Shown piece after piece: positions 14,750 to 37,299 of a stretch of DNA of 50,523 nucleotides. A program made the position numbers and the translations under genes. Position 1 is the first letter of the stretch. Each line of letters begins with the position of its first letter. The stretch comes from Cyanophora paradoxa CCMP329. Taxonomy: Eukaryota; Plantae; Glaucophyta. The stretch lies in assembly GCA_004431415.1 (NCBI GenBank), contig QPMI01000340.1:1-50523 (forward strand). Direction: 5' to 3'. The notes below the pieces were generated by a model. The model did not search any database, had not been told where the DNA came from, and was given only the letters and a program-made list of their open reading frames with translations.

Positions 14750-15622
14750 ATGAACCGAAGGCGAATTTTTTTGTACTGTGTCGGATTAAGCTGCGCCTTA
14801 CTTTCAATTTCTGTCCTGCAAAAAAAAGAGAGTTGCGAGCCGCTTCAGACCACTTCGTTGTGGGAACCAACTCAAAGCTGCTGTGGTGTCGCCGTCCTAG
14901 TTGAAACCCGACATTCAGGACACTTTTTCGCCGTTGTTCATAATTTCAATCGCAAACTGCCAGCTTGTTGGTGTATCCAGCTTTTCTATCCTTCCGATTC
15001 CATCCCATTTCTCCGTAAATCTTTCCGAGAGCAAATTCACATGGGAAGAATTGTTTTGTCTGAAATAAATGCCACGTTTTTGCCGATGAGCATCGCAAAC
15101 TACAATTTTTACATGACGTCGTATGAGTTTTGGATGTCTTGCATCCACGACAGAGTTCTCATATTTCAGCTCGATTCATTTTTGTGTGAGTCTTCATCGC
15201 AGTCAATCGATGACTGGACTCTGTTCGATCTGGTTGGCGCTCCATGGCGACTTCCTGTTGCTCACCCAGTCGTCGGCAATGGAGGTCTATCTTACCGCAA
15301 CCGAAGTTTTATGATACGAATTCTTGATGAATTTGGGGAGCACTTCTCGGATGAAGCAAAGTTTAGAAATGCGACGAAGCGTTATGCCACATGGAGATCA
15401 GCACGTGGAATGAGTGTTACTGTCACGGAAGCAAATGAGGATGCATGTTTCGCTTTTGCATGCCATGCATTAGGTTGCAGAATGCCGTCAGTTGAATTAG
15501 CAAGACAGTTCGCAGTCGAAACCTTTTTTCACCCGCGTCCCTTAGGAATACACAAGTACTGGGCATATCAAACTGGTCAGGAACTGAACACGCTTAAAGA
15601 GTTTTGTATGGATCCATTTTAA
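14750..15622 (+). CDS. DUF5672-family putative glycosyltransferase with N-terminal signal anchor (290 aa)
   Basis: Basic residues then a hydrophobic N-terminus. Motifs VLIFQLDS, DLVGAPW, VGNGGLSYRN, NEDACF, ARQFAVET and LGIHKYW. Paralog at 36466-37299. Confidence 0.85.
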   Translation: MNRRRIFLYCVGLSCALLSISVLQKKESCEPLQTTSLWEPTQSCCGVAVLVETRHSGHFFAVVHNFNRKLPACWCIQLFYPSDSIPFLRKSFREQIHMGRIVLSEINATFLPMSIANYNFYMTSYEFWMSCIHDRVLIFQLDSFLCESSSQSIDDWTLFDLVGAPWRLPVAHPVVGNGGLSYRNRSFMIRILDEFGEHFSDEAKFRNATKRYATWRSARGMSVTVTEANEDACFAFACHALGCRMPSVELARQFAVETFFHPRPLGIHKYWAYQTGQELNTLKEFCMDPF

Positions 15623-15737
15623 AAAAACTGTCGTATGTCGATGTAACTAACCTGCATGCATGCATGCATGCAAAAATGAACGAAAAACTCGGTTACTAAC
15701 CTGCATGCATGCTTCGTTTGATTCTCAAGGGCACTGT

Positions 15738-16071
15738 AGGGGCAGGGGCCGCTTGCTTTCTCAAGAGCACTCTGAAAGGATTGCATGTCAAAGGGAGTTT
15801 CTTTTTCTTGTTTCCAGTTTGTGGTCCTGGCTCCCCATCACCCCCCCAAAATCTTACCGGGGGCCCCATCCACACAGACCAGGGGGCAGGGGCCGCTTGC
15901 CTACTCCAGGACACTCTGACAGAATTGCATGACAAGCGGAGTTTCTTTTTCTTGTTTCTAGTTTGTGGTCCTTGCTACCCCATCCACACAAAACAGGGGG
16001 CAGGGGCCGCTTGCCTACTCAAGAGCACTCTGATAGGATTGCATGACAAGCGGAGTTTCTTTTTCTTGTTT
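15738..16071. repeat. Three-copy local tandem repeat (spacing ~144 and ~114 bp)
   Basis: GGGGCAGGGGCCGCTTGC...CACTCTGA...ATTGCATG...GGAGTTTCTTTTTCTTGTTT at ~15740, ~15884 and ~15998. Confidence 0.88.
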
Positions 16072-16402
16072 AGTTCACGAATCTTTGTGTCAACCACTTG
16101 GCTGCAGATACTAAATGTTTTACTGACTTCAACTTTTATAGTTTCATTGACAAGCTCACGCCTAGTGCACGCCTGCCTAGTGAATCATTGATTTCCAAGG
16201 GAATCCCAGTGGGGTAGGGTGCACCTGCCTTAGGCTAGCACCGTGCGCAGTCTCCCCAGAAAGAGATTGTGGGCACGTTGACTTAATTTGGGGGGCCCCA
16301 GTGAACAAATGATGTCAGAGGGAGTATCAGCGGTATGGGGTGCACCCTGGTGGGGTGGGAAACAAACAATAAACAAGGAGAAATAAATTTCAAGAAAGAG
16401 AA

Positions 16403-17248
16403 TCAGTCAATGATTGCAGTGATATGTACACAAAATTCTTTTACCATCACTTCCTCGATCCGGTACTGGACACTGTTAAATCCATCAATTTCCATCTTCT
16501 CTCGAATTCTACCAAGCAATTCGAATCTATCTTCAGCAACTTGATTGGTTCCTGGATGTGCAAGGTCAGCATACTCCCCTTCACAATGTGGATTTAAACG
16601 TTTAACAGGAAGCTTCTTGACCGAGAACCGTCCTCCAAAGTCATCATCCTCGCCACCCCAACCCCAGTAGGAGTTGGAATGTCCGTTGACCAAAGTATAA
16701 TCCTTGATTGAAACAAGAAAAACGCCACCAGAATAAGATTCATATGGTAGCTTGTAATTGAACTTCTGTACACAGCTTGCAAGGTGGATAGGCTGATCGG
16801 AGAACAAGTACGTATTGTTGCGTCGAGTTGGCAGTAAATCGACATCATGCAATGCAACGTAATCAAAGTGAGACCGCGTTACGTTAACACCGACGTTGAA
16901 CAGTTTTCCCCTATTGAACTTTCTATTTCCATTTTGCTCGATCAAAAAGATTTGAAAGTTCACTTTCTGCATAACAAGCCAGTGATGCATGTAGAAAGTG
17001 AACACGGAAGCCTGAGCATCTCTCGCACGGACAGGCACAATGACTGCTAGCTTATGTTCCATGTGCGGGTTACAAACCACGATAGGTAGTTGAGGAACGG
17101 CATCGACGCTCTCAACGATAACATGGCACGAACTGGAAGGGGCTTGAAAAGAAGGCGTAGTTAGAGAGCTTGAGAAATCCGAATGCAACAAGGAGCCTAA
17201 CACGATAGCGTTCAAGACAAGCGCACCTAATAAGTAAGCAAGTTTCAT
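16403..17248 (-). CDS. GT7-family beta-1,4-galactosyltransferase-like type II membrane protein (likely start MKLAYLL)
   Basis: KLAVIVPVR, FNRGKLFNVG, HDVDLLP (DxD), GGV, NGHSNSYWGWGGEDDD and DGFNSVQY are hallmark GT7 motifs. N-terminal transmembrane segment. Confidence 0.93.
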   Translation of the reverse strand: MKLAYLLGALVLNAIVLGSLLHSDFSSSLTTPSFQAPSSSCHVIVESVDAVPQLPIVVCNPHMEHKLAVIVPVRARDAQASVFTFYMHHWLVMQKVNFQIFLIEQNGNRKFNRGKLFNVGVNVTRSHFDYVALHDVDLLPTRRNNTYLFSDQPIHLASCVQKFNYKLPYESYSGGVFLVSIKDYTLVNGHSNSYWGWGGEDDDFGGRFSVKKLPVKRLNPHCEGEYADLAHPGTNQVAEDRFELLGRIREKMEIDGFNSVQYRIEEVMVKEFCVHITAIID

Positions 17249-17419
17249 TTTAGGATGGTACAGGCTTTCAACCTGGTCACCTGGTCGGTGGGATGAAAGC
17301 AAAGGGCGCCCAGCTGGAGACCTGCATGTAGCTCAGCCATTCCGAATGGGACGCCCAGGGAGTGTTTCAGGATTTGAAGGTTTGAGCTCCACGCTGGCCC
17401 CGACATCCTGTCCTAGTAC

Positions 17420-17843
17420 CCCTGCTAAGCGCATCAAGTTATCGAAGAAGTCGCAGCAGATTCCGCAATTCGAAATCCATGCCGACGGACCTATGAAGCA
17501 TATTGAAATTGATATTGTTGGTCCGCTTCCGAAGACTTCTACTGGGAATCAATATTACAATCACGGATGTTTTCACTCGTTGGAGTCATGCAGTTGCAGC
17601 TCGAACCAAGTCAGCGCATTATGTTATTCGAGCTCTATTTGATCACTGGATCCCGTTGCACGGATTGCCGGTGAAGATTTCATCTGATCAAGATGGTGAA
17701 TTTGATAGTTTTCCATTTTTCGAGCTTGAGCGGCTCTTTAAAATAAACATGTTCTCTCTTCGTCATACCACCCGCAATCTTAGGGTGCGGTCGAAAAAAT
17801 TCATTGATGTTCTCGTCACTCGACTGCGTTTGTATATTGAGGA
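17420..17843 (+). pseudogene. Degenerate gypsy integrase core fragment (family 1)
   Basis: PQFEIHADGPMKHIEIDIVGPLP and DHWIPLHG...SSDQ, interrupted by frameshifts. Confidence 0.88.
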
Positions 17844-18290
17844 CCGCGATCACCGCCACCAGAATAATTTCCAAAATCACGAGAATCGCGCTGGGAATAA
17901 TTGCCATTCCCACGACCGCGACCTTCAAAATTTCCACGATTAAAATTGCCAAAGTGCCAAAGTGGCCTCTCTCGAACTGTCCAAAACTTGTTGAAACAAG
18001 CACTCCCCGGGACGAGTCCCCTTTTCCACTCGAAATTTGAGAATGTGAAGCACGCAAATGCGGTTGACCATCCAGCGCACTGCCTGGGATTGTATCCAAA
18101 GAATCAATTCTACAACTACTAGCATCTTTCTTTGCATTGGCAACGATAGGGAAATTGGTTGATTGGGAAATAGTGGATGGTGAAAGGGAAGAAGAAGAGA
18201 GATGATCAGAACAACTGCTGACTTGCTTCGAAGTTCGTCAAAGGAATTCATTCAAAGATATTACAGGAATAAAATTTGCGTGAAGGGAAA
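17844..18290 (-). pseudogene. Scrambled gag-tail and pol N-terminus fragment (family 1b)
   Basis: GQPHLR...SSGKGDSSRGVLVSTSFGQFERGHFGT matches the 8563 ORF. It is fused to sequence matching ~8295-8405 (gag). Confidence 0.85.
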
Positions 18291-18292
18291 GA

Positions 18293-18750
18293 TTGTTTTT
18301 GTGTGCACCTGACTTCCTGCTGTTGGCCCAACGGGAATTCAAACTGACCAGGGCTGAGAAGGAGTGAACCCCACCACTGAGTGAAGGAGTGAAATTAAGC
18401 AACACAGTCCCAGAGCTCTTGGTCTTCTCCACTCAGCCATTCGGAATGGGACTCCCACTGAGTTTTAAGGGATTTGAATGTTTCCTGGGTTCACTCCTTA
18501 GCGATGGTCAGTTTGAATTCCCGTCGGGCCCACAACAGGAAGTCAGGTGCACACAAAAACTTTCCAGGGGGAACATGCACAAGGTGCTAGCCTTTGGCAG
18601 GTGCACCCCGCCCAGCAGAGACCCTGTAAGAGGCTCTGCCCTTCCAAGCGGGATTCTCGCCGACTGTTTCAGGACTTGAATGTTTCCTGGGTTCACTCCT
18701 CAGCCTGGTCAGATTGAATTCGCGTCCGGCCCACAACAGGAAGTCAGGTG
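18293..18750. repeat. SatA fragments in both orientations
   Basis: Inverted at ~18293-18370 and forward at ~18432-18750; diverged. Confidence 0.88.
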
Positions 18751-19222
18751 CCTCTCGAGCAGTCCAATGAAAATGAGAACTCTTGGCGCAAAGATCATAG
18801 AGTGGCGCCGCAAGAACTGCATATAAAGGTACAAAGATTCTATAATATCCAGTCATGCCGAGAAAAGTCCTAACTTCTGATACAGATTTGGGGGTCGCAA
18901 ATTTGCGAGCTGCCTCCATCTTTGTGGCAGAGGTCTTGATGCCCTGTCTAGTAACCACAAATCCAAGATACTCCAATTCAGCCTTGAAGAATTTCGACTT
19001 CTTGGTCTTAAAGAAGATGTTTGCCCATCTCATAGCACCAAAGACCCACTGAAGGTCTGCCAAGTGCTGTTTCAGATATTTCGAAAATACACATATATCA
19101 TCCAAATATACCAATAAATAAGTTCCAAGAACGCTGTTTATCATCATCTGAAAAGTGGCCGGGGCTGTCTTCAAGCCCAAGTCCAAGGGGAGACCGAAAA
19201 GCAGTCTTCTCCTTGTCCTCCT
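18751..19222 (-). pseudogene. RT fragment close to the intact element (family 1a)
   Basis: TAPATFQMM..VYLDDICVFSK..RTFLGMTGYYRIFVPLYAVLAAPLYDLCAKSSHFHWTARE is nearly identical to the 31592 ORF, with small deletions. Confidence 0.9.
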
Positions 19223-19400
19223 CGTACAGGGCCTCTGCTGGGCAGGGTGCACCTGCGTAAGGCTAGCGCCTTGTGCACGTTCTCCCTGGAAAGTTTTTGT
19301 GTCCACCTGACCTTGCTGTTGTGGGCCCAAGGGGAATTCAAACTGACCAGGGCTAAGAGGGAGTGAACCCAGGAAACATTCCAGTCCCCAAACACTCGGC
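19223..19400 (-). repeat. Inverted SatA monomer
   Basis: Reverse complement of the consensus. Confidence 0.9.
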
Positions 19401-20932: not shown

Positions 20933-23900
20933 GTGCCCCGACCCAGAATGCCGGCTGCCTAACTGACCCTCGCAGCCATTCGAGCACTGGGCCGACATGC
21001 TCGCTGACCTTGGCCTCGAGGACACGCTCCGCCGCCTAAGAAAACATTGCTTCGGCAGATGCATCGTGGCTCGACTACATTTTCCTCGACCCTGCGCTGT
21101 CCGACCGCGCCGCCTACCTTGATAGGTCAGTGGTCGAGCCCTTAGGCTGATATCCCCCCTCGGGGGGGAACGGACCCAGTCTTGGTAGACTTGTTTTTTT
21201 CTGTCTTGTGTCTTTTTGTTTTGTTTGCGGTGCTACCACCATTTGTGGTAGCATCGGTAGGCTTTCCAATCTGAAACTAAGAAGTGGAAAATCGCTTGCC
21301 AGTGCAGTTGTGGAGGAGGTGGCCTCTGAAAACGTGGACAATAGTTTAGAGGACGAGGAACCTCAGGTAGAAATCGAGGAAATGGCAGAAGAAATTCTTG
21401 CTAGACAGAAGCTTGTTAATCTTTTAGAGAAAAAAGCCTCCAAATTTCAATTTTCTGGTGTGTGTCTTAACCCAGACGGGTTTTCTGGAGTTGATGACTT
21501 GAAAATAAAAATGGAAAATGTCATTCTCAAGGGGGTACCAGGTCTCTCACAAGATGAAAAGTTTTCTGTTTTGCTAGCGGCTACAACGGGTGTTGCTCAT
21601 GATTTTCTTTGTCAGCTTGACCACCCAGAACCCTTGCCAGCAACTTTTTTTGATGATGTTGTTAATCAATTGAAAGCGCGATTCAATCCCAGTAAAGACG
21701 ATGCTCGGGCGTATTTCTACAATCTCAATCCATGGACACCAGACCTCAGTTCAAACATCAATGGATTTATTGATACGTCCCTCAAGGTAGCCAGAGTTGC
21801 ATTCCCAGGAGAGGTGGACAAAAATCTGGTGGAGTATATTCTGAAGCTGGCATCATCGAAGCACTACAAATATTTTAACATGCTTGGAATCTCCTCTTTG
21901 AATGATTTCCGCACCAAATTAGAGCAGGCAGAGGCCCAGAGGTGTTACGATCCCCCTGATCCCAAATTGATTCAGTCTCTTTTTCGATCACAAGTGATGT
22001 CTCAAAATTCAGCAGCCACTGGACAGTCTGGAAACAATCTAAATTTTCGGGTGACCGATCAGTCTGACAGATCGCGTCGCTATTGCACCCACTGCCGTAA
22101 AACTGGACACACTGAACCGTATTGTCATGACAAATATCCGGAACTGAAAAAAAAGATGTTTGCTAATTTGCGGCGAATAAATCCTCGCCCCAATCGAGTG
22201 CAGGTACTTATTAGGGGTGTGAAATATGAAGGTAATGAGCTTGACGATGGATCTTATGCAGTAGATGTTCCTCTTGCACCTGTGGAAAATGCAAACAAGT
22301 CTGAGTACCTCATAGCTAAGCCAAAAAGGGTTTACCCAAGGGAGGTGTTGCTGGGGTACAGACAACAGGAACAGTGTCCAGCAGGCACTGTACCTGTGGC
22401 CATCAATGGAATTAAGACCAGAGCCATGCTTGACACAGGTGCAGACGTCTCCCTAGCAACTAAGAAAGTTACTGTCAAGGCTGGCTCAAACATATCTTCT
22501 GCTGGCCCATTGCTTTCTGGTTTTTCTAATGACACTATAAAACTTCTTGGAACAACAGTTTTGGATGTTAGCTTAGGGCCTCTTTCCACAAAAGAAAAGT
22601 TAGTGGTTCTCGAAGACATGTCACATGATGTTATTCTTGGAAGAGACTATTGCATTAAACATGGAATTGACATCTCACATTCTAAGGGGGTTGTGACTTC
22701 AGCTAGCACTCAAGATATGAGCATCCCTCTTTCTCTTGATGAATCTTCAAATCTGCCTCTATGTATTTCGGAAGACATAATAGTGCCAGGAAACAGTGGT
22801 GTTGCAGTCTCGCTCTCTAATCCTGCACTTTCAGGAGCAGGATGTATTATTTTTGACAACAAGAAATTGCATCCAAAGAATCTGTTTGGCATAAATGGCC
22901 AGACGGTGCCTGAAGGAAAAGATGTGTTTGCAATTGTTTTCAATGGTAGTGATAATGAGATGATGCTAAAGAAGGGTGATGTTTTGGCATCCTGGATCCA
23001 AGAAGCAAATCATGAAATTCTCTCACTCAATCTCCATAAAGGCAAAGAAAATGTGACATCAACAATTGATCCTTCTTTTGACAGAGCTTACTTTGATAGC
23101 ATAGAGTCTCAACTGGATTTTGGTTTTTCTGGAGCAACTGTAGAACAGAAACAAATAATGAAAGAATTGTTTAGGAACAACTGTGATATTTTTGAGAACA
23201 AGTTCGTATTTTCTGAAGACAAGTGCTTGCCTGGAGAACACAGCATTGATACTGGTGATCATCCTCCTATCAAATCGAGGCCTTTACACCATTCCCCCAA
23301 GGACCGAGAATTGTTCAAAACGACTTTGGAAGACATGCTTGCTCGAAATTTAGCAGCACAGTCCCAGAGCTCTTGGTCTTCTCCAGCTTTCTTTGTCAGC
23401 AAGCATGATACGTCTGAAATGCGGCTCGTAGTTGATTATAGACACCTGAATGCAGCAACCAAGAAAAATGTTTATCCATTGCCTAATATACAAGATATGT
23501 TGGACGCACTTCAGGGAAGTCGGTTCCTTTCGAATATGGATCTGGACACTGGATTTTGGCAAGTTAAGATGAAGCCATCTGACCGGGAGAAAACCGCCTT
23601 TAAAACCCCTTATGGCTTGTTTGAAATGAAGGTTATGCCCATGGGACTTACAAATGCCCCCCCCCACATTTCAGGCCATCATGGAAAATATTTTCTATGA
23701 TTATCTCTGGATGTTTGTTCTCGTTTTCATTGATGATCTTATTACATATTCCAAGACTTTTGAAGAGCACTGCAGAGACTTGCAAAATACATTCAACAGG
23801 CTACGTGCCAACAACGCGAAGCTCAAGCCCAACAAGTGTCACTTCTTTAAAATGGAGCTCAAGTTTCTTGGTCACATTGTAGATAGAAATGGCAGGCGCC

Positions 23901-24915: not shown

Positions 24916-24977
24916 GATGCCCTGCAAGAGGCAGAAGGGGCAAGCCTAAGGGAACGGCAGTCATTATGCATCCTCTT

Positions 24978-27152: not shown

Positions 27153-27209
27153 TGGAGTACTGGAACAACCTCCCATCACCCAGTCAGTGGCTATCTTGAT
27201 CCCGCCCGC

Positions 27210-27522: not shown

Positions 27523-27526
27523 CCCA

Positions 27527-29222: not shown

Positions 29223-29224
29223 CT

Positions 29225-29394: not shown

Positions 29395-29595
29395 TGTTGC
29401 GAAGCGTAGTTCCCCTTCCTTTTCGCCGTAGCGAATGTAGCATGTACGCTAGGGATACTCCGTCCCTTGTGTAGGGGTATGTTATTCAATCATACGCGGA
29501 TATTACGCGTGTGTGCGCGTGCGTCCCGGCACGGCACTGCGCCGTGTGCGGAAGTGGCTAGAACCCATCGTATAGCTATTAGCAGCTTCTTATCA
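29395..29595 (+). repeat. 5' LTR
   Basis: TGTTGCG...CTTATCA; 4 differences from the 3' LTR by manual comparison. Confidence 0.97.
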
Positions 29596-30111
29596 TCGGG
29601 GCTGCCGCCGGAAGCCATTGTATTTCGTGGCAGCGGTGGAATGTTCGACGCAAAGTGTTCGACACAGCGGTCTCACAGCGTCTGCGCATCGTTCTTCTGA
29701 TTGCGTATACGCTTACAGTGCGTTCTGCAGCGATTTGCGCACTGCGACCTTTCATTGTCGATTCCGCCATTCTGCGGAGAACATAAGCTTGTTGCATCGC
29801 GATTCACTCATGGATCTCATTTTCGAAGCTCTGTGCACTCTTGGCCGGCTGGCCGAGGTCGTTTGCTTGTGATACCTCCGTTTTCCGTGGAATTCCGCGA
29901 GTTTCCGGAGTTGTCTCTTTTCTCTCCTTTTGGAATCTCTCTTTATCTCTCTTTCTTTCTTTTGGAACGATCTGAAATGCTTTCTTGAACACTGGCCTCG
30001 TCAAGCGACACTATTCGTGCTGTGTACCGTCGTAGGCTTGGGCCCTTCGCTAGGTCCTTAGTTAACGACTGTATTAATAAAGCTATCCTGCTCTCCGCAC
30101 AGGCAGGAAGG

Positions 30112-31281
30112 ATGGCCGACGAGGACAACGTTTCTGTGGACATTGACCAGGAGGACATCATGGCTGCCCAGCCTAGGGTGGACATGATTAAGCCGCTCCT
30201 GCGCAACCTTAATCTGCCCAAATTCGAGTATTCTGCTCCTTCTAGATTCCTCAAAAACGTTCGTGACGTGTTGAAGGCGATCTATGTCCTTCCCACTGCG
30301 GACACCACTCCCTACTCCACATGGACGGCTCAGGCAAAGGTTGATTTTGACTATGCTTGGCCGCATGTGCAGTTGAAACTCCAGTCTGTCTTCAACGAGG
30401 CAGCTGGGGCCCATGACTTTTCTCGAGTGGTCCTTGAATGTGACAATTGGACGACTTTTCTTAAGAAGTTCGAGGATCACTTTATGCATTCGGATGTCCA
30501 GACGGATTCTGCTCGCAATTTCTGGTCCTACACATACCAGAGTGCTTGTCTCCAGGCTGGTACTCAAGTCAATTTTGAGGACTTTGCTGTGGAGAAGATG
30601 AAGCGGGCGGAAGAAGCTGGCATTCTCGAGAAAGTTGTGGTGAAACAAATTTGGAGTGATGATCTTAAGTTGGGTGAGCTGCCTGCTGAATTGGACGACA
30701 ATAAACTTCGCTTTTTGCGTCGGCTGCGCAGTCTTTGGACCGATCGCACTTCCTCTTTTTCTTCGGTTTCTCCTTTTGGAATTGCTTCTCTTCCTTTTGG
30801 ATCGCCGAAAAACGTTTCTGGATTGAACGCTCTCACTTCGGAGCGTATTGAGTCTTTGATTGATGAGCGGGTTGAATCGAAGCTCAAACAGTTTTCTTTG
30901 AAGGTGGATGATAAGCTTGATGCACTTCGTGACGAAACTCGCCGCCAATTGAGCGAGATTCGGCACGAAGCTCGCCAGCAGTTCGATGAGTTGCTCGACG
31001 ACTCTCGTCGCACTTCTTCTATTATTTTGGATTGCATGGACCAGTTGTCTCGCCAGTTGCAGTATCGCCCTCGCGGTGATAGCTGGCGTGACCAGCCTCG
31101 TGGAAATTACAATTTTGATCGCAATCGTTCGAATGACAAATTTGGTAATTCTGGAAATGATTCTCGCAATTTTGGAAATTCTTCTTGTGGTTATCGCGGT
31201 CGCTCTGCTGAGCGCCGTGGGTCGTCGGCTGACCCTAAGGGTCGGGGCGGTTCGCAGCCCCGCCCGGCGGGAAAAGCCTAA
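30112..31281 (+). CDS. gag: Gag (no zinc knuckle; coiled-coil-like segment and R/G/N-rich tail)
   Basis: Long ORF between the 5' LTR and pol; first ATG at 30112; tail conserved in the 8180 copy. Confidence 0.88.
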   Translation: MADEDNVSVDIDQEDIMAAQPRVDMIKPLLRNLNLPKFEYSAPSRFLKNVRDVLKAIYVLPTADTTPYSTWTAQAKVDFDYAWPHVQLKLQSVFNEAAGAHDFSRVVLECDNWTTFLKKFEDHFMHSDVQTDSARNFWSYTYQSACLQAGTQVNFEDFAVEKMKRAEEAGILEKVVVKQIWSDDLKLGELPAELDDNKLRFLRRLRSLWTDRTSSFSSVSPFGIASLPFGSPKNVSGLNALTSERIESLIDERVESKLKQFSLKVDDKLDALRDETRRQLSEIRHEARQQFDELLDDSRRTSSIILDCMDQLSRQLQYRPRGDSWRDQPRGNYNFDRNRSNDKFGNSGNDSRNFGNSSCGYRGRSAERRGSSADPKGRGGSQPRPAGKA

Positions 31282-31320
31282 CCCAGCCTGTTGTTGCCCG
31301 CCAGGCTGGGGCGGCCAAGA
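31269..31320 (+). promoter_or_regulatory. -1 programmed ribosomal frameshift signal
   Basis: G_GGA_AAA heptamer in the gag frame, 6-nt spacer, then a 9-bp stem CCCAGCCTG/CAGGCTGGG. The -1 frame is open and homologous to the other copy. Confidence 0.8.
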
Positions 31321-31591
31321 AACCAGCCATTTTCGGCGCAGCGAATGGACTTCGATCGTTGTTGCCTTTGATTACTCTCAATGAGTTCTTGAAGCGGCAG
31401 TCGTTGTCGGTCGCTCGCGCTTTCCCTTTCCCTTCCTTGGATGCTTCTCAATCTTCTTCTCCTATTTCTTCTTCTGGTCCCGATGTTACCCTTCAAGAGA
31501 ATGATCCCATTCTCCATGAGGTTGCTTCAGTGGAAATTCGCCCAGACATTCTGGTTTTGGTCAAGCGCATTCGCGTGAAATTAAAAATGTT

Positions 31592-34500
31592 TTGGATGAT
31601 TCGAAAAGTGCTAGTAGAGTAGTGGTAGTTAGTGGAAATCGTGGAAAATTGGAACAGAAATCCCTTTCGAATTTCTTTTCTGATGAGCTGCGATGGAAAC
31701 GAGATGCCCCTGCTAAAAAGCATTTTATATCATCTGCAAACAATTCGAAGCCGGTTTCCCTGAAGTTGTCTTTTGATGATAATGGCCGAGCCTCAATTGA
31801 AATTTGTTCTCTGGACTCCCAGAGCCCTCCTGCTGAGCCTGCATTCGCAGGGCCGCGTCGCTTCATGACCTCAGCTCCGGGGAGGTCAACTCTGGACGTT
31901 GTCATTCAGGGCAAACATCACAAATTCCTTCTCGACAGCGGGGCAGATGTCTCTTTCATTCTTTCTTCTACAATCTCTTCTCTTGGACTTCAAAATAAGG
32001 TGTTTAGAACTATTCACACTCCTTCTGTCAAGCTCCCGAATTCTGCATTGGTGGCTGTTCCTGGTGAGGTTCATGTGGCTGCTACTATTGGGCCCCTCAC
32101 CCGGAGTTTTCCTTTTCTTGTGGTTGATTTCCCGGGATACGCATTCGATGGCATCTTAGGCCAAGATTTCTTTTCTGATAATGGAGTCACCTATTGCAAT
32201 AAGGACGCTGACAACCGATTTGTGGTCTTCGCCAAGCACCCAGACAAGCCAGTTAAGTGTGGAATTCTCTCTTTCTTACCTGGCACCTCTACGCAGCCGA
32301 GTTCTCTGTCGCCGGAGACACCGGAATCTGACCCCTTGGACGACTCCAGCGCTCGCAGAGTGTCCAAGGAGCATGGTCATATTCTGGAGGTTGCAAGGGA
32401 GGTTAAAATTGAACCTGGTGTGCAACGGAAGGTTGAACTGCAAGTCGGAGGCAACCACTATTTGCCGGATTGTGAAGGTTTTCTTGTCAACTTCTACAAA
32501 TGGGACGACAATCAGGAGGTCCGTGTGGCAAACGGGCTTGCTGCGTGTCGTGGAGGCAAAGTATATGCTTTAGTTTCGAATTTGAGCAATCGTTTTTCTG
32601 AGAAACCAGTTGTTTTGAAGAAGGGCCGTGCAATCGCACGATTTGTCCCTGAGAAAAATCTCGAAGCTGAAGTATTTGACTTGGCTCTAAATTTGAGTTA
32701 TGATCAAGATGGGAACGGCAAGTATGTGAAGGTCGACCGGCCTGGCGAGGTTCCGTCGCCTTCGAGCTCAACATACTCTGCTCAGTACACTTGCGCAGAC
32801 TCATTGCAAGTCAACTCTGCCGATGCCAAACATGTTGACAATTCTTTCGTGGAAATCGCGCCTCCAAAACGTTCACCGGAGTCCGAGAATGCTTCGAAAA
32901 ATGTTTTTGATAGAGTAGGTCTTCCCGAGTGTTCATATCCATATGAGGAGAAGTTAGGTAGTTTTTCGCATTTGAACGCTGTTCCGATCGATCAAGCTTC
33001 GACTGTTATTTTTGATGAATTGCGGCAACGATATGGCGCCGACATTATTGATGCTCTCCGGGCCGTCGACATTGGCAGTCGGGATGATACGCCTGCGGAG
33101 CGTGCTGTTATGGCTGACTTCCTTGCACAGAACTGGGACTTGGCCAAGGCTGCGCTACCTCCGTACGACCCAAGTGCGCCTCATCCCCCGATCAAGCAAT
33201 CGATCAAGACTGGGGACGCCCGCCCCATCGCGGAGCCCCCTCGGAGGCACTCGCAGACTGAACGAGAATTAATTATCGATGAGACCAAAAAGTTGCTTTC
33301 TCGCAATCTTATTCGTCCCTCTCGCTCACCTTGGGCCGCTCCTGTGGTCCTTGTGCGCAAGAAGGATGGATCTCTTCGATTTTGCATTGATTATCGCAAA
33401 TTGAATTCAGTTACTGCGGACGACGCTTATCCTTTGCCTAGAATTGATGATGCTCTTGAAGCTTTGACTGGAGCAATTTATATTACTGGTATGGATGCCC
33501 CTGATGGCTATTGGGGAATTGAAATGGAGGAGGAGGACAAGGAGAAGACTGCTTTCCGGTCTCCCCTTGGACTTTTTGAATGGAATGTTATGCCCCAAGG
33601 CCTAGAGACGGCCCCTGCCACTTTTCAAATGATGATGAACAGCGTTCTTGGCACTTATTTATATGTATTCATTTTGGTATATTTGGACGACATATGTGTA
33701 TTTTCGAAATCCTTGAAGCAGCACCTTGCTGATCTTCAGTGGGTGTTTGATGCAATGAGACGGGCAAACATCTTCTTTAAGCCCAAGAAATCGAAGTTTT
33801 TCAAGGCTGAATTGGAGTATCTTGGATTTGTAGTTACTAGACAGGGCATCAAGCCCTCTGCCACAAAGGTGGAGGCTGTTCGCAAGTTTGCGACACCCAA
33901 ATCTGTATCAGAAGTTAGGACTTTTCTTGGAATGACTGGATATTATAGAATCTTTGTACCTCTATATGCAGTTCTTGCGGCGCCACTTTATGATCTTTGC
34001 GCCAAGAGTTCACATTTTCATTGGACTGCTCGAGAGGATCTGGCTTTTCGAAAATTAAAAGAGTTGCTTTGTTCTGCTCCCATCCTTTCGCTTCCTGATT
34101 TCTCTAAATCTTTCATTCTCAAGACTGATGCTTCTAAGACCGGAGTTGGTGCGGTCCTTTCTCAATTGGATGAATTTGGGAATGAAAAAGTTGTTTCTTT
34201 CACTTCTCACAAATTCTCATCTCCTGAGAAGAAATGGAATCGGGAAGTTGTTATTGAATATGCAGCTGAGTCCCTTTCTGATGAGCAGCAGAAGTGGACG
34301 GTCGCGGAGCAAGAGTTGTATGCAATTTGGTGGGCTGTCACCAAGAAGTTCCCTCAGTATCTCCGTGGCAAGAAGTTCATTATCAAGTCGGATCACTCGG
34401 CTCTTCAATATTTGAAATCGGCTAAGAAGTTGCCCAGTGCTCGCATCACTCGCTGGATTATGGATATGCAGGAGTTTGATTTCGAGATCCAGCACAAGCC

Positions 34501-35917
34501 TGGCAAATCTAATGCCGATGCGGATGCTCTTTCTCGCCTTGTGCGAGTAGCAGTTCTTTCCTTGGAAGCGATGGAGTTTTCTTCTAATTTTTCGAGCGCT
34601 TTCTTGGATGCGATTGAGTTGCAGTTGAGTTTGCCCCCGGCTCGAATTCGGGATGAGCAGATAAATGATGTTATTTTGGCGGATATGATCAAGTATTTTG
34701 AATCGGATATTACAATTGAACCACAAGGTGTCAACAAGGAGGCCGAACGCCAACTCAAGAGTGGCAAGTTTTCTGTGCAAGATGGCGTTCTCGTCCACAC
34801 TCGGCCTTCGGACGAACTTGTGCGTATTTGCGTACCCGATCAACTTAAATCGATTATTGTGTCTTCGGTACACCGCACGCTCGGACATCCCGGAGTCGGC
34901 CAGATGTACAATCATCTCAAGCGGCGGTACTATTGGCGGAGCATGTTCTCTGATGTCGCTACATTTGTTTCGACATGCGCCGATTGCCAACGTGTCAAGA
35001 ATTCCAAGACTGTTCAAGCGGTTCCTCAATTTGAGATTCATGCTGACCGGCCGATGCAACACTTGGAAATTGACATCGTCGGGCCTTTTCCGAAGTCGAA
35101 ACAAGGCAACAAGTATCTGATTACTATTATCGATGTTTTTACGCGTTGGTGCCATGCGGTGCCCGCGCGAACGAAGTCGGCTATGTTTGTCGTTCGGGCG
35201 TTGTTCGACCACTGGATTCCCCTGCATGGAGTCCCCGCCAAGATTTCGTCGGATCAGGGCGGCGAATTCAAGAATTTGCTTCTTAATGAACTGGAGCGTC
35301 TTTTCGGAATAAAGGCGGTCTTTTCTTCTTCTTATCATCCGCAGTCTCAAGGTGCTGTGGAAAAATTGAATGACACTTTGGTTACTCGTCTACGGTTTTA
35401 TATTGACAAAAACGCTTCAACATGGGATCTCTCTCTTCCATTTGCGCTCTTCGCAGTGCGCAATTTCGTTAATCCTACCACGGGCTACACTCCTTTCGAA
35501 ATGTTGTACGGAAGGCCTTGTACTCTTCCTGTGGACTTGCTGGCTACTCCTGAAGTTCAAGTGACAACTTCGGAGCCTACTGGTTACCCAGCCGTGTTGG
35601 CTCGGCGGTTCTCTCGCATTTATACCGATATTCAGCAAGCTAAGGAGGAATATCTTGCCAAGCAGCAGCAGCGGCCTTCTCAACCAGTTTTCATTCCTGG
35701 AGAAGTTGTTGCTGTGAAGACCCCTTCCACTCGGCGGTCTGATAAGCTTTCCCATCGTTTCACTGGACCTTGGACGGTGCTTAAAGATGTTTCTCATGGC
35801 AAGGGAGTTACTTTCTTGCTGGAGTATTCTGGGCCTAAGGAGCGTGGTTCTCCTGCTGAGGGCTCGCGTCAGATGGTTCATGCCTCTCGGCTCAAGCCTT
35901 GGAGGGACCCTGATTGA
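31592..35917 (+). CDS. pol: Pol polyprotein (protease, RT, RNase H, integrase with GPY/F-like tail, no chromodomain). The true N-terminus lies upstream, across a 1-bp lesion at ~31548.
   Basis: LLDSGA, YLDD, TDAS, HHCC, D-D-E motifs and KLSHRFTGPW; 1441 uninterrupted codons. Confidence 0.97.
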   Translation: MDDSKSASRVVVVSGNRGKLEQKSLSNFFSDELRWKRDAPAKKHFISSANNSKPVSLKLSFDDNGRASIEICSLDSQSPPAEPAFAGPRRFMTSAPGRSTLDVVIQGKHHKFLLDSGADVSFILSSTISSLGLQNKVFRTIHTPSVKLPNSALVAVPGEVHVAATIGPLTRSFPFLVVDFPGYAFDGILGQDFFSDNGVTYCNKDADNRFVVFAKHPDKPVKCGILSFLPGTSTQPSSLSPETPESDPLDDSSARRVSKEHGHILEVAREVKIEPGVQRKVELQVGGNHYLPDCEGFLVNFYKWDDNQEVRVANGLAACRGGKVYALVSNLSNRFSEKPVVLKKGRAIARFVPEKNLEAEVFDLALNLSYDQDGNGKYVKVDRPGEVPSPSSSTYSAQYTCADSLQVNSADAKHVDNSFVEIAPPKRSPESENASKNVFDRVGLPECSYPYEEKLGSFSHLNAVPIDQASTVIFDELRQRYGADIIDALRAVDIGSRDDTPAERAVMADFLAQNWDLAKAALPPYDPSAPHPPIKQSIKTGDARPIAEPPRRHSQTERELIIDETKKLLSRNLIRPSRSPWAAPVVLVRKKDGSLRFCIDYRKLNSVTADDAYPLPRIDDALEALTGAIYITGMDAPDGYWGIEMEEEDKEKTAFRSPLGLFEWNVMPQGLETAPATFQMMMNSVLGTYLYVFILVYLDDICVFSKSLKQHLADLQWVFDAMRRANIFFKPKKSKFFKAELEYLGFVVTRQGIKPSATKVEAVRKFATPKSVSEVRTFLGMTGYYRIFVPLYAVLAAPLYDLCAKSSHFHWTAREDLAFRKLKELLCSAPILSLPDFSKSFILKTDASKTGVGAVLSQLDEFGNEKVVSFTSHKFSSPEKKWNREVVIEYAAESLSDEQQKWTVAEQELYAIWWAVTKKFPQYLRGKKFIIKSDHSALQYLKSAKKLPSARITRWIMDMQEFDFEIQHKPGKSNADADALSRLVRVAVLSLEAMEFSSNFSSAFLDAIELQLSLPPARIRDEQINDVILADMIKYFESDITIEPQGVNKEAERQLKSGKFSVQDGVLVHTRPSDELVRICVPDQLKSIIVSSVHRTLGHPGVGQMYNHLKRRYYWRSMFSDVATFVSTCADCQRVKNSKTVQAVPQFEIHADRPMQHLEIDIVGPFPKSKQGNKYLITIIDVFTRWCHAVPARTKSAMFVVRALFDHWIPLHGVPAKISSDQGGEFKNLLLNELERLFGIKAVFSSSYHPQSQGAVEKLNDTLVTRLRFYIDKNASTWDLSLPFALFAVRNFVNPTTGYTPFEMLYGRPCTLPVDLLATPEVQVTTSEPTGYPAVLARRFSRIYTDIQQAKEEYLAKQQQRPSQPVFIPGEVVAVKTPSTRRSDKLSHRFTGPWTVLKDVSHGKGVTFLLEYSGPKERGSPAEGSRQMVHASRLKPWRDPD

Positions 35918-35989
35918 TCTCTTTCTTTTCTTTTCCTTCCTTGGGCTTGGCCAGCGCGGACGTGGCCTTTTTCTTACTTGGAGGAGAGT

Positions 35990-36190
35990 TGTTGCGAAGC
36001 GTAGTTCCCCTTCCCTTTCGCCGTAGCGAATGTAGCATGTACGCTAGGGATACTCCGTCCCTTGTGTAGGGGTATGTTATTCAATCATACACGGATATTA
36101 CGCGTGTGTGCACGTGCGTCCCGGCACGGCACTGCACCGTGTGCGGAAGTGGCTAGAACCCATCGTATAGCTATTAGCAGCTTCTTATCA
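35990..36190 (+). repeat. 3' LTR
   Basis: Direct repeat of 29395-29595, preceded by the PPT. Confidence 0.97.
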
Positions 36191-36455
36191 GGGCCTTTGA
36201 CTGAGTGACTTGCGGGTGGGTGGGTCATCTGCCTAAAGCTAGCGCCTTCTGCATATTCCCCCAGAGAGATTTGGGGTGCATCTTTCTTCGATTTTGTGGC
36301 TGATTGGAAACCTGGGGCCTTCGACTGAGTGACTTGCAGGTGGGTGGGTCATCTTTCTAAGGCTAGCGCCTTGTGCATATTCCCCGGAATGAACCCAGAA
36401 ATCAGTCAAATCCCTAAAGAGTCTGTGGGTGTCCCACTCGGAATTTCTGAGCCTC
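36191..36455. repeat. ~1.6 SatB monomers followed by a strongly diverged inverted SatA piece
   Basis: SatB to ~36385, then TGAACCCAG..GTCCCACTCGGAA..GAGCCTC. Confidence 0.85.
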
Positions 36456-36465
36456 TTCCAACAAA

Positions 36466-37299
36466 TTAAAACGGGTCCTGGCAGAAGGACTTGATTATAG
36501 ATTGCTCTGCAGGGGATAAGTAGGCCCAGTACTTGTGGACAGCAAATGGTTTTTCGTAAAAAACTGTTTCAACAGCAAATCGCATAGCAGTTTCAGGGCT
36601 TGGGAGCCTGCAACCGAACTCTTCTGCATGGGTTTGACATATTATTCCCCACAGACAGTCTTCAGCCCCATCAATGTGTGAACCATACCTCTCATAAGCA
36701 ACATCTTCGACTTTTTTGAACCCATCCCCCAAGCTGTCGAGAATGCGCAACATCATGGACTTGTTCCGATAAGACAGCCCACCATTCCCTACACGAATAC
36801 GTCCACTTTTCCATGGTGCTCCAACAATATCATAGGAATTCCAGTTCTCGATAGAATCGACGCTTGATTCGCAGAGAAAAGAGTCAGACTGGAATATAAG
36901 AACCTTCTCGGTTTCAATGACACTCCAAAACCACACAGTTTTCAGTAAATGATTGTAAAGCGACAAAGATAACGGTTGAAACTTTTGTGGTAACGGAACG
37001 AGCTTTATTTTACCAAAACGCACATTAAGCCCGAAACTGTTTCGAAGAAAGCTTTCTTTGTCAATATCGTACATAATTACAATGCACCAATTATCAGGCA
37101 ACTTTCGAAGTATATTCGCAATGATTGAAAAAAGCTGTTTGGACACCGGCCCAAGTGTTGTTACGGCTGTTCCGCCGGAGCAATCATGCCCTTGTACGCT
37201 TCTATCAACCGAGGACTGTGGATTATTGGTGAGGGTGTGATGAAGTAAAGTGAAGAGACAAAGAGTCAAACACAACACCAGCAGTCTCAATTTTATCAT
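36466..37299 (-). CDS. Second DUF5672-family putative glycosyltransferase with signal anchor (277 aa)
   Basis: VLIFQSDSFLCESS, YDIVGAPW, VGNGGLSYRN, AEDCLW, RFAVET, HKYWAY and a terminal FCQDPF, shared with 14750-15622. Confidence 0.87.
   Translation of the reverse strand: MIKLRLLVLCLTLCLFTLLHHTLTNNPQSSVDRSVQGHDCSGGTAVTTLGPVSKQLFSIIANILRKLPDNWCIVIMYDIDKESFLRNSFGLNVRFGKIKLVPLPQKFQPLSLSLYNHLLKTVWFWSVIETEKVLIFQSDSFLCESSVDSIENWNSYDIVGAPWKSGRIRVGNGGLSYRNKSMMLRILDSLGDGFKKVEDVAYERYGSHIDGAEDCLWGIICQTHAEEFGCRLPSPETAMRFAVETVFYEKPFAVHKYWAYLSPAEQSIIKSFCQDPF

What the first reader, a model, noticed from the sequence alone, without database searches (positions are those of the whole stretch)
14750..37299. 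Five intact, intronless Golgi-type glycan-modifying genes hidden inside the satellite/retroelement island
Seen: every recognisable non-TE gene in the window is a 277-312 aa protein with an N-terminal signal anchor: DUF5672 x2, GT7, GT34 and a CmcI-like methyltransferase. All frames are intact although the surrounding TEs are shattered. Known: GT7 and GT34 are Golgi GT-A enzymes, and CmcI-family members include sugar O-methyltransferases. Inference: a functionally coherent cluster that builds and methylates one surface glycan, kept by selection in repeat-rich chromatin. Position-effect silencing or satellite-mediated rearrangement could then vary the glycan, as in a contingency locus.
Basis: partly seen in the sequence, partly recalled or inferred. 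Interest (0 to 1): 0.82.

Follow-up and report, generated by a model that had tools for sequence, protein, structure and literature searches.

The report
Sugar-enzyme gene cassette inside satellite DNA
Five intact, intron-free genes for membrane-anchored sugar-chain enzymes (four predicted sugar transferases and one methyl-adding enzyme) really do sit in small islands inside satellite and jumping-gene DNA of what is probably the alga Cyanophora paradoxa, but they look like late arrivals and nobody has yet shown that they are switched on.

Summary
Pfam confirms five single-exon ORFs: DUF5672 (14750-15622 +), GT7 (16403-17248 -), CmcI/RMNT methyltransferase (24978-25916 -), a divergent GT34 (26277-27152 +) and a second DUF5672 (36466-37299 -). 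Each has one N-terminal hydrophobic anchor and keeps every family-invariant residue I could test.

New here: the DUF5672 model is a GT-A glycosyltransferase fold, so the set is four GT-A enzymes plus one SAM methyltransferase. About 6.3 kb of unique DNA carries them. It is split into three pieces by satellite blocks and Ty3/gypsy copies.

The genes are compositional outliers. They have 43-46% GC and no introns, against the published 67.6% GC and 9.2 introns per gene for C. paradoxa. That species identity comes from earlier scan notes and I did not verify it.

No close relative exists for any of the five (best 35-50% identity). No sampled virus or metagenome locus carries the same gene set. The DUF5672 pair groups with cellular sequences, not viral ones.

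Best reading: a block-acquired or compartment-confined glycan-extension and O-methylation cassette, probably functional. One neighbouring gypsy copy is intact, so not all nearby TEs are shattered.

Earlier scan notes report other gene islands beside satellite DNA in this genome.

The parts
14750..15622 (+). DUF5672 gene 1 (290 aa), single exon, N-terminal anchor at residues 6-24. Predicted GT-A glycosyltransferase.
   Evidence: Pfam PF18922 at 93.8 bits. All 15 family-invariant columns kept. 42% identical to gene 2. Hydropathy.
16403..17248 (-). GT7 beta-1,4-galactosyltransferase-like gene (281 aa from the ATG at 17248; the mechanical ORF starts at a TTG at 17302).
   Evidence: Pfam 7N and 7C domains. 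E 7.7e-42 to bovine b4GalT1 over 210 residues, with the DVD and WGWGGEDDD motifs kept. Anchor at residues 3-21.
24978..25916 (-). CmcI/RMNT-family SAM methyltransferase gene (312 aa): anchor, then a stem of about 100 aa, then the catalytic domain.
   Evidence: Pfam PF04989 at 125 bits. All 33 invariant columns kept against 19 relatives.
25917..26276 (.). 360-bp shared upstream region of the divergently oriented methyltransferase and GT34-like genes. It contains a 76-nt satellite-like piece at 26010-26085.
   Evidence: Coordinates. Any promoter function is inferred only.
26277..27152 (+). Divergent GT34-like GT-A glycosyltransferase gene (291 aa from the ATG; the mechanical ORF starts at a TTG at 26178).
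   Evidence: Pfam PF05637 at 41.4 bits. DxD (D123, D125), W121, G176 and H254 kept. AF2 model with pLDDT 77.7 is nearest to XXT1 and PBCV-1 A64R domain 1.
36466..37299 (-). DUF5672 gene 2 (277 aa). Only 37 bp separate the ATG from the satellite, and the stop codon abuts satellite-derived DNA.
   Evidence: Pfam 100.2 bits. Sequence read. AF2 model pLDDT 86.8 with GT-A matches at Z 12-13.6.
28702..29073 (.). Duplicate of 24717-25086: satellite plus the last 36 codons and 3' flank of the methyltransferase gene. A truncated gene fragment.
   Evidence: 94.4% identity over 373 nt, with 2 differences in the 154 non-satellite bases. tblastn gives 38 aa at 87%.
29395..36190 (+). Intact Ty3/gypsy element that splits the cassette: 201-nt LTRs, gag at 30022-31281, pol at 31592-35917.
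   Evidence: Pfam PR-RT-RNaseH-INT. LTRs 98% identical. TG..CA ends and a GGGC target duplication inside a satellite unit.
8563..13755 (.). Two broken gypsy pieces in opposite orientation, left of the cassette.
   Evidence: Pfam. 69-79% nucleotide identity to the intact copy. CpG o/e 0.79.
17346..19330 (.). Gypsy fragments starting about 100 bp upstream of the GT7 start codon.
   Evidence: ORFs. RVT_1 hit. CpG o/e 0.70.
21208..24355 (+). Broken gypsy copy of another lineage (gag-PR-RT-RNaseH), lying between gene segments.
   Evidence: Pfam. No nucleotide match to the intact copy. CpG o/e 0.46.
1..8169 (.). 206-bp satellite array (39.8 copies) bounding the island on the left.
   Evidence: TRF.
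37337..50523 (.). 123/124-bp satellite array (over 100 copies) bounding the island on the right. Its orientation flips near 37.9 kb.
   Evidence: TRF. Orientation map.

Best explanation
The five ORFs are real, complete genes for secretory-pathway (Golgi-type, type-II anchored) glycan enzymes. They form one compact glycosylation cassette.

Components:
- a beta-1,4-galactosyltransferase-like GT7
- a retaining-type GT34-like transferase
- two old paralogues of a so far uncharacterised GT-A family (DUF5672)
- a CmcI/rhamnosyl-O-methyltransferase-family SAM methyltransferase

Proposed mechanism (inferred). In the Golgi lumen the transferases would extend a glycan on a glycoprotein or glycolipid with galactose and other sugars. 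The methyltransferase would then cap a terminal sugar with an O-methyl group.

Proposed origin (inferred). The cassette is not an ordinary resident gene set of the presumed host, because it is intronless and about 20 points lower in GC. It most likely entered as a block from an unsampled donor (virus, mobile element or another eukaryote), or has long been confined to the low-GC, non-recombining satellite compartment. Satellite growth, inversions and gypsy insertions later cut it into three pieces without breaking any frame.

Shown: gene integrity, family membership, conserved catalytic residues, predicted folds and topology, composition, and architecture.

Inferred: Golgi location, enzyme activities, joint action on one glycan, acquisition as a block, and present-day activity.
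For: Family membership
- Pfam hits are above the curated cut-offs for all five.
- GT7: E 7.7e-42 to bovine b4GalT1, with DVD, WGWGGEDDD, the Tyr before the GGV motif and the aligned metal-binding His kept.
- GT34-like: the invariant W121, D123, D125, G176 and H254 are kept. The model is nearest to XXT1 (E 1e-8) and PBCV-1 A64R-D1 (TM 0.72 by target).
- Methyltransferase: 33 of 33 invariant columns kept.
- DUF5672: 15 of 15 invariant columns kept in both copies.
- DUF5672 fold: model pLDDT 86.8. Every listed Foldseek hit bar two is a GT-A glycosyltransferase; the two exceptions are IspD-type nucleotidyltransferases of the same broad fold. VIA Z is 12-13.6 over about 200 residues.

Topology: one N-terminal anchor in each protein and no other hydrophobic segment.

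Age of the paralogues: the two DUF5672 copies are each other's nearest kin (SH-aLRT 98-99) at only 42% identity. They are therefore old paralogues that both stayed intact.

Co-occurrence elsewhere
- DUF5672 lies next to two GT7 genes and an O-FucT-like gene on viral contig L026.
- Two DUF5672 genes lie next to a WbsX GT on L094.
- A GT34-methyltransferase fusion exists (P0301).

Composition
- Genes: GC 43-46%, GC3 43-48%, GC2 34-43%, CpG o/e 0.81-1.06.
- Broken gypsy copies have CpG o/e 0.46-0.79 and the satellites 0.24-0.34.
- Published host values are 67.6% GC and 9.2 introns per gene (PMC6704402).

Local assembly looks sound: there is a clean LTR pair with a target-site duplication.
Against:
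- None of the five exact proteins is in the 15-billion-protein collection. No near-identical protein came up in the searches of three of them. I therefore have no sign of a transcript or of an annotated gene model.
- Very short unique upstream DNA for two genes: 37 bp for DUF5672-2 and about 100 bp for GT7.
- Intact frames exclude neutral drift only beyond roughly 2% divergence. P(no stop in any of the five) is 0.15 at 1% and 0.02 at 2%.
- The original contiguity of the three segments is assumed, not shown.
- Best-hit affinities are mixed: DUF5672 cellular or viral, methyltransferase bacterial, GT7 near animals. That fits piecemeal assembly as well as block transfer.
- The host identity, and so the GC and intron contrast, rests on earlier scan notes plus a paper, not on my own test.
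Confidence: 0.45

Rival explanations
1. Silent relic of an endogenous virus or other large mobile element. On this view the five genes are the glycosylation module of an integrated giant-virus-like or unknown element. They are intact only because they arrived recently, are not used by the host, and are on the way to decay.
For: - The genes are intronless and low in GC in an intron-rich, GC-rich host.
- Giant viruses commonly carry clusters of GTs plus sugar methyltransferases (review PMC9614988).
- DUF5672 is abundant in giant-virus contigs: 114 relatives, many with an N-terminal anchor and the same Cys pair.
- L026 combines GT7 and DUF5672.
- The GT34-like model resembles chlorovirus A64R-D1.
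- Frame integrity is uninformative for young insertions.
- An earlier scan note (s1-528584) judged another satellite-side gene island in this genome a patchwork of probably silent arrivals.
Against: - No viral hallmark gene lies in the island. The roughly 6.3 kb of unique DNA is almost filled by the five genes.
- The DUF5672 pair falls with fungal and other non-viral sequences, and is split (SH-aLRT 98) from all 66 viral-type rows.
- GT7 sits on its own long branch and is closer to animal enzymes (about 40% identity) than to the viral L026 copies (about 30%).
- The methyltransferase's relatives are bacterial. Only 8 phage-sized viral contigs have one.
- None of 163 viral or metagenome DUF5672 loci carries the methyltransferase or GT34, and only one carries GT7.
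- CpG is not depleted in the genes, unlike in the old TE fragments.
Confidence: 0.25
2. Ordinary, vertically inherited host genes. On this view they are old glaucophyte Golgi enzymes that happen to lie in a satellite-rich (perhaps pericentromeric) region. Low GC and lack of introns would reflect the local mutation and recombination regime, not foreign origin.
For: - All five are deeply divergent from anything sampled. The best GT34 hit in 1.84 billion representatives is E 5e-14, and GT7 and DUF5672 sit on long private branches. This is expected for a deep, poorly sampled lineage.
- The families are eukaryote-type Golgi families with type-II topology.
- The DUF5672 duplication is old.
- The gypsy copies in the same compartment are equally low in GC.
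Against: - Per PMC6704402, even bacterial-derived genes in this genome have gained 13-27 introns, and the mean is 9.2 per gene. Five of five genes without a single intron is therefore unexpected.
- GC at first and second codon positions is also low, and the amino-acid make-up is FYMINK-rich. This implies a long history at low GC.
- A neighbouring unique ORF (27527-28156) has 62.8% GC in the same compartment.
Confidence: 0.2
3. On this view heterochromatin spreading, or satellite-mediated rearrangement, switches the cassette on and off or reshuffles it, so that cells vary a surface glycan.
For: - The genes lie within 5-450 bp of satellite DNA.
- A recent satellite-associated duplication truncated a copy of the methyltransferase gene.
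- Satellite orientation flips around each gene segment.
- From memory, not checked here: telomeric galactosyltransferase (SCG) genes of Leishmania set surface lipophosphoglycan side chains, which would be a precedent of this kind.
Against: - No evidence of variable expression.
- No archive of alternative gene copies. The window holds only one 42%-identical pair and one dead fragment.
- No simple-sequence tracts inside or just upstream of the ORFs that could slip.
- The idea is compatible with the data but not indicated by them.
Confidence: 0.06
4. Artefact: a misassembled contig, or DNA of a contaminating eukaryote in the culture.
For: The composition is unlike the published host average. None of the proteins is found in the public protein collection.
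Against: - The internal structure is coherent: an LTR pair with a target duplication, continuing the satellite phase.
- The same satellites occur on both sides and between the gene segments.
- Earlier scan notes report the same kind of satellite and gypsy islands next to other gene sets elsewhere in this genome.
Confidence: 0.04

Closest known systems
Animal beta-1,4-galactosyltransferases (CAZy GT7; B4GALT1-7, BRE-4)
   Same: Both Pfam GT7 domains are present. The protein is 38-42% identical to insect, mollusc and nematode enzymes, and E 7.7e-42 to bovine b4GalT1. The DVD, WGWGGEDDD and aligned metal-binding His are kept, and it has the type-II anchor.
   Different: It is shorter (281 aa), with a minimal stem. 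It lies on a long branch outside the animal sequences, together with two unlabelled metagenome proteins. It is in an alga and has no introns. Acceptor and donor sugars are untested.
GT34 retaining transferases (plant xyloglucan xylosyltransferase XXT1, yeast Mnn10/Gma12) and chlorovirus PBCV-1 A064R domain 1
   Same: Pfam PF05637 is above its cut-off. The DxD and C-terminal His are kept. The predicted fold is nearest to XXT1 and A64R-D1. In PBCV-1, A064R joins such a domain to a sugar O-methyltransferase domain (PMC9614988), which echoes the GT34-methyltransferase gene pair here.
   Different: Sequence similarity is very low (19-28% identity). An exhaustive search of 1.84 billion representatives gives a best E of 5e-14. 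Here the methyltransferase is a separate, divergently oriented gene of the CmcI family, and I did not compare it with A064R-D3.
CmcI / rhamnosyl O-methyltransferase family (Pfam PF04989)
   Same: Strong Pfam hit (125 bits). The catalytic part is 42-50% identical to bacterial members, and all 33 invariant columns are kept, including the glycine-rich SAM loop.
   Different: It carries an anchor plus a stem of about 100 aa and sits in a eukaryotic nuclear contig beside glycosyltransferases. Its substrate is unknown. According to a 2020 review, no glycan O-methyltransferase of microalgae has been characterised (PMC7773692).
DUF5672 (Pfam PF18922) of giant viruses, fungi and other eukaryotes
   Same: Both copies hit above the cut-off and keep the LxFQxD, GxxxxNGGLSxR, ED and FxxE motifs. 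They share the anchored form with a conserved Cys pair, which is seen in fungal proteins and in many giant-virus proteins.
   Different: They are at most 35-37% identical to any relative. They form their own clade inside the non-viral group. The only paper I found that mentions the family does so once, in a Streptococcus suis T7SS effector study that I did not open. The GT-A assignment made here is from predicted structure only.
Glycosylation gene clusters of giant viruses (for example the Mimivirus 9/12-gene cluster and the CroV 38-kb cluster)
   Same: Several GTs and a sugar methyltransferase are packed together, without introns and at lower GC than the host (PMC9614988). One viral contig combines GT7 and DUF5672.
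   Different: There are no nucleotide-sugar synthesis genes and no viral core genes. All products carry secretory-pathway anchors. The phylogenies do not place the genes inside sampled viral clades.

Membership tests
CAZy GT7 / beta-4-galactosyltransferase family | Both Pfam halves (Glyco_transf_7N and 7C) score above their gathering scores | tested here: met
   76.1 and 72.5 bits against cut-offs of 27 and 23.
CAZy GT7 / beta-4-galactosyltransferase family | Metal-binding DVD motif, the WGWGGEDDD catalytic loop, and the C-terminal metal-binding His | tested here: met
   All three align with bovine b4GalT1 in the HMMER alignment. Residue numbering in the literature is from memory.
CAZy GT7 / beta-4-galactosyltransferase family | Transfers Gal or GalNAc in beta-1,4 linkage from a UDP-sugar | not testable with these tools
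   Needs an enzyme assay.
CAZy GT34 | Pfam PF05637 above its gathering score, with nearest relatives in the same family | tested here: met
   41.4 bits against a cut-off of 23. All ten best exhaustive-search hits that I scanned carry PF05637.
CAZy GT34 | DxD motif and GT-A fold close to solved GT34 members | tested here: met
   D123 and D125 are invariant columns. Foldseek's top hit is XXT1 at E 1e-8, with model pLDDT 77.7.
Pfam DUF5672 (PF18922) | Domain hit above the cut-off and family-invariant residues present | tested here: met
   93.8 and 100.2 bits. 15 invariant columns are shared by both copies.
GT-A fold glycosyltransferases (as a class, for DUF5672) | Rossmann-like GT-A fold with an acidic motif after the central strand | tested here: met
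   Predicted structure only. Z 12-13.6 at rmsd 3-4 A over about 200 residues to LARGE1, UGGT, BoGT6a, glycogenin and LgtC. The conserved FQxD follows a strand. Activity is not testable here.
CmcI / rhamnosyl O-methyltransferase family (PF04989) | Domain hit above the cut-off and the SAM-binding glycine-rich loop kept | tested here: met
   125 bits against a cut-off of 23.2. E153, G155, G159, S161 and A162 are among the 33 invariant columns kept.
CmcI / rhamnosyl O-methyltransferase family (PF04989) | Methylates a sugar hydroxyl | not testable with these tools
   The family also holds non-sugar enzymes (CmcI), so an assay is needed.
Golgi type-II membrane glycosyltransferase architecture | Short cytosolic tail, a single N-terminal anchor, then a luminal catalytic domain | tested here: met
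   By hydropathy only. A helix at 2-25, then a low-confidence linker, then the domain in the DUF5672 model. Localisation is untested.
Contingency / phase-variable locus | Switchable expression, or a set of alternative gene copies that are exchanged | tested here: not met
   For alternative copies inside the window, there is only one 42%-identical pair and one truncated fragment. Switching itself could not be tested.
Endogenous giant-virus element | Viral hallmark genes (capsid, polB, VLTF3, A32 and the like) in the same island | tested here: not met
   ORFs of 150 aa or more give only gypsy domains and the five enzyme families. There is little unique DNA left over.
Endogenous giant-virus element | The genes nest inside viral clades | tested here: not met
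   The DUF5672 pair is split from all 66 viral-type rows at SH-aLRT 98. This was tested for DUF5672 only, on a quick tree.
Processed retrogene | Poly(A) tract and target duplication at the 3' end | tested here: not met
   No A-run beyond 5 nt is seen downstream of any of the five stops.

The most novel reading that the evidence does not exclude
The cassette is a domesticated, horizontally acquired 'glyco-island' that gives this alga a lineage-specific O-methylated, galactose-bearing surface glycan. Its anchored CmcI-family enzyme would be the first identifiable Golgi glycan O-methyltransferase of an alga, a class of enzyme that reviews say has not been characterised. DUF5672 would be a new glycosyltransferase family shared by giant viruses, fungi and protists.
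Probability: 0.2. Interest if true: 0.7.

Novelty: new variant of a known kind. Interest (0 to 1): 0.45.

Why it matters
If the genes are active, three things follow.

1. They give a concrete candidate for the glycan O-methyltransferase that algal glycobiology lacks. O-methylated N-glycans are common in Archaeplastida microalgae, yet no enzyme is known (PMC7773692).

2. They put a function (GT-A sugar transferase) on DUF5672, a family that is widespread in giant viruses and fungi and has no literature to speak of.

3. They show that a eukaryote can keep a compact, operon-like set of glycan enzymes alive inside satellite DNA. That bears on how foreign genes are taken up and on whether heterochromatin can host working genes in protists.

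If the genes are silent, the island is still a useful dated example of foreign DNA parked in satellite arrays.

Tried and rejected
Expression and public records
No place was reported to me as human-like.
- Exact look-up of the five proteins found none in the collection.

Searches for relatives and for the same gene set
- The viral scan with a single DUF5672 protein found no relative. The alignment-based scan worked.
The narrower A4 worked but found nothing closer than about 34-40% identity and no co-located GT7, methyltransferase or GT34.
- PDB sequence search for the methyltransferase gave no hit at E <= 0.01.

Selection and origin tests
- dN/dS between the DUF5672 paralogues is not usable because dS is saturated (NG86 and YN00 fail; LWL85 gives dS 2.7).
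- I looked for a shared upstream motif or poly(A) tails at the five genes and found none.
- Retrogene origin is rejected for lack of poly(A).
- Recent transfer from animals for GT7 is rejected by the tree.
- The 'secretory-type Cys pair shows cellular origin' argument is rejected, because many giant-virus DUF5672 proteins have the anchor and the Cys pair too.

Literature and earlier notes
- One paper search timed out. Searches for DUF5672, PF04989, Cyanophora O-methylated glycans and Cyanophora satellites gave nothing useful.
- The search of earlier findings by sequence was blank, which means nothing according to the operators.

Not checked
- Species identity was not independently verified.

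Full report
**What is there.** The window is bounded by two large satellite arrays: a 206-bp array at 1-8169 and a 123/124-bp array at 37337-50523. The two satellites share a module of about 74 nt.

Between them lies a 29-kb mosaic with three kinds of content:
- Ty3/gypsy copies: broken pieces at 8563-13755, 17346-19330 and 21208-24355, and one intact copy at 29395-36190.
- Short satellite blocks in both orientations.
- Four stretches of unique DNA: 14319-17345, 24933-27301, 27526-28527 and 36386-37336.

Three of the unique stretches carry the five reported ORFs, which fill about 69% of them. No other non-TE family turns up among ORFs of 150 aa or more.

One correction: one gypsy copy is intact. 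It has a 1441-aa pol ORF, LTRs 98% identical, TG..CA ends, and a GGGC target duplication that continues the satellite phase.

**Are the genes complete and sound?**
- *Topology.* Each protein starts with a single hydrophobic segment within residues 1-26 and has no other. Each ends where its family ends, so none needs a further exon.
- *GT7.* It aligns with bovine beta-4-galactosyltransferase 1 over 210 residues (E 7.7e-42). It keeps the DVD metal site, the WGWGGEDDD loop, the Tyr before the GGV motif and the aligned His.
- *Methyltransferase.* It keeps all 33 columns that are invariant among 19 relatives, including the SAM loop.
- *GT34-like.* This is the weakest case by sequence (41 bits). Still, it keeps the five invariant columns of its nearest relatives, including DxD and the C-terminal His. 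Its AlphaFold model (pLDDT 77.7) is closest to xyloglucan xylosyltransferase XXT1 and to domain 1 of chlorovirus A064R.
- *DUF5672.* Both proteins keep all 15 invariant columns. The model of copy 2 (pLDDT 86.8) matches almost only GT-A glycosyltransferases. VIA Z is 12-13.6 over about 200 residues against LARGE1, UGGT, BoGT6a, glycogenin and LgtC.

The only paper I found that mentions DUF5672 does so once, in a Streptococcus suis T7SS effector study that I did not open. The set is therefore four predicted GT-A transferases plus one SAM methyltransferase.

**Where do they come from?** None of the five has a close relative.
- *DUF5672-2.* Best hits are 35-37% identical. Many sit on giant-virus contigs beside Pox_VLTF3 and GMC oxidoreductase genes, and 114 relatives are found in the viral collection. 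However, a 77-row tree puts the window pair, as sister paralogues, inside an 11-row group with the fungal and other non-viral sequences. That group is split at SH-aLRT 98 from all 66 viral-type rows. This is a quick tree with long branches, so the placement is provisional.
- *A rejected argument.* I first thought the anchor and a conserved Cys pair marked the cellular type. I dropped that, because many viral proteins have both.
- *GT7.* It is closest to animal enzymes (about 40% identity) but sits on a long private branch outside them.
- *Methyltransferase.* It is closest to bacterial, often membrane-anchored, "cephalosporin hydroxylase"-annotated proteins, at 42-50% identity over the catalytic part.
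- *GT34-like.* Its best hit among 1.84 billion representatives is E 5e-14.

I then asked whether the same combination exists elsewhere. Among 83 viral and 80 metagenome loci with a DUF5672 gene and up to 10 kb of flank, none has the methyltransferase or the GT34-like gene. Only one, L026, has GT7 genes nearby. The cassette is therefore not a copy of any sampled viral cluster.

Three associations elsewhere do support the view that these families work together on glycans:
- L026 carries 2 x GT7, an O-FucT-like gene and DUF5672.
- L094 carries 2 x DUF5672 and a WbsX GT.
- P0301 is a GT34-methyltransferase fusion.

**Composition and gene structure.**
- The five genes have 43-46% GC, GC3 of 43-48% and GC2 of 34-43%. 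Their amino-acid make-up is FYMINK-rich.
- Earlier notes of this scan identify the genome as Cyanophora paradoxa. I could not verify that from this window.
- For that species the published figures are 67.6% GC, "intron-rich genes" with a mean of 9.2 introns per gene, bacterial-derived genes with 13-27 introns, and only 1.77% LTR elements (PMC6704402).
- On those figures, five intronless genes in a row at about 45% GC are strong outliers. The low GC reaches the non-synonymous positions, so it is old.
- CpG is not depleted in the genes (o/e 0.81-1.06). It is depleted in the broken gypsy copies (0.46-0.79) and the satellites (0.24-0.34), and not in the intact gypsy copy (0.99).

This pattern fits genes that are either young in this place or protected.

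**Selection.** Frame integrity is weak evidence. If all five drifted neutrally, the chance that none acquires a stop is 0.15 at 1% divergence and 0.02 at 2%. These are roughly the ages suggested by the LTR pair (2% between LTRs) and by the duplicated methyltransferase fragment (1.3%).

dN/dS between the two DUF5672 copies is not usable because dS is saturated. Their retention of all invariant residues at 42% identity shows long purifying selection, but not where it took place.

If the three gene segments were once contiguous, the cassette predates the decayed gypsy fragments that now separate them. In that case it has been preserved in place. That contiguity is an assumption.

**Rearrangement.**
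- A 373-nt stretch, made of satellite plus the last 36 codons and 3' flank of the methyltransferase gene, is duplicated 4 kb to the right. It shows only 2 differences in its 154 non-satellite bases.
- Gene segments are bracketed by inverted satellite modules. Three of three is not significant.
- DUF5672-2 has only 37 bp between its ATG and the satellite.

That this serves to vary a glycan is not indicated by anything I could test.

**Verdict.**
- *Most likely (0.45):* an intact glycan-extension and O-methyl-capping cassette of secretory-pathway enzymes. It was either acquired as a block from an unsampled donor or has long been confined to the low-GC satellite compartment. It is probably still functional.
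- *Main rivals:* a silent relic of a viral or mobile element (0.25), and ordinary old host genes (0.20).
- *Minor rivals:* the contingency-locus idea (0.06) and an artefact (0.04).

**Limits.**
No tool reported any stretch as human-like.
- The retroelements here are those of an alga. I built no consensus and repaired nothing.

Noticed in passing
window 24717-25086 and 28702-29073: Recent direct duplication of a satellite piece plus the last 36 codons and 3' flank of the methyltransferase gene. There are 2 differences in the 154 non-satellite bases, against 19 in the 216 satellite bases.
   Followed up: partly
window 29395-36190: Apparently intact Ty3/gypsy element: 201-nt LTRs 98% identical, TG..CA ends, and a 4-bp GGGC target duplication exactly within a 123-bp satellite unit.
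   Followed up: partly
window 1-8169 and 37337-50523: The 206-bp and 123/124-bp satellites share a module of about 74 nt at 81-82% identity. The right-hand array changes orientation near 37.9 kb.
   Followed up: partly
window 14198-14318 / 18549-18669; 24798-24912 / 27302-27421; 36191-36385 / 37337-37877: Each gene-bearing unique segment is bracketed by satellite modules in inverted orientation (85-87% identity for the first two pairs). This could reflect inversion breakpoints or foldback-type mobilisation. Three of three is not significant on its own.
   Followed up: no
window 27526-28527: A 1-kb unique stretch with 62.8% GC and a 209-aa low-complexity, Gly/Ala/Arg/Pro-rich ORF (27527-28156) without a Pfam hit. 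Its composition is quite unlike that of the five enzyme genes next to it.
   Followed up: partly
window 15739-16071: A local tandem repeat of about 114-144 nt (77-92% identity) between the DUF5672-1 and GT7 genes. It is unrelated to the two big satellites.
   Followed up: no
window 8563-36190: CpG observed/expected falls with apparent TE age: intact gypsy 0.99, broken copies 0.79, 0.70 and 0.46, satellites 0.24-0.34. This hints at cytosine methylation of old repeats, while the five genes stay at 0.81-1.06.
   Followed up: partly
L026:4081-10642: A giant-virus-collection contig with two tandem GT7 genes, an O-fucosyltransferase-like gene and a 569-aa protein ending in a DUF5672 domain, all within 7 kb. 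This is a viral glycan cluster using two of the families seen in the window.
   Followed up: partly
L092:1839-3161 (protein P0301): A natural fusion of a GT34 domain with a Methyltransf_24/TylF-type methyltransferase domain, on a 30.6% GC compact contig that also encodes GT2, UDP-glucose dehydrogenase, a sulfotransferase and an alanyl-tRNA synthetase. Whether it is a virus or a bacterium was not determined.
   Followed up: partly
L094:1-5915: An 8-kb environmental contig (58.6% GC) with two DUF5672 genes 3 kb apart, next to a WbsX-family glycosyltransferase.
   Followed up: no
window 47610-50494: ORFs that run through the 123-bp satellite give low-score Pfam hits (YacG, HTH_58, T3SS_ATPase_C) with zero significant stretches. 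These are artefacts of translating a tandem repeat.
   Followed up: yes
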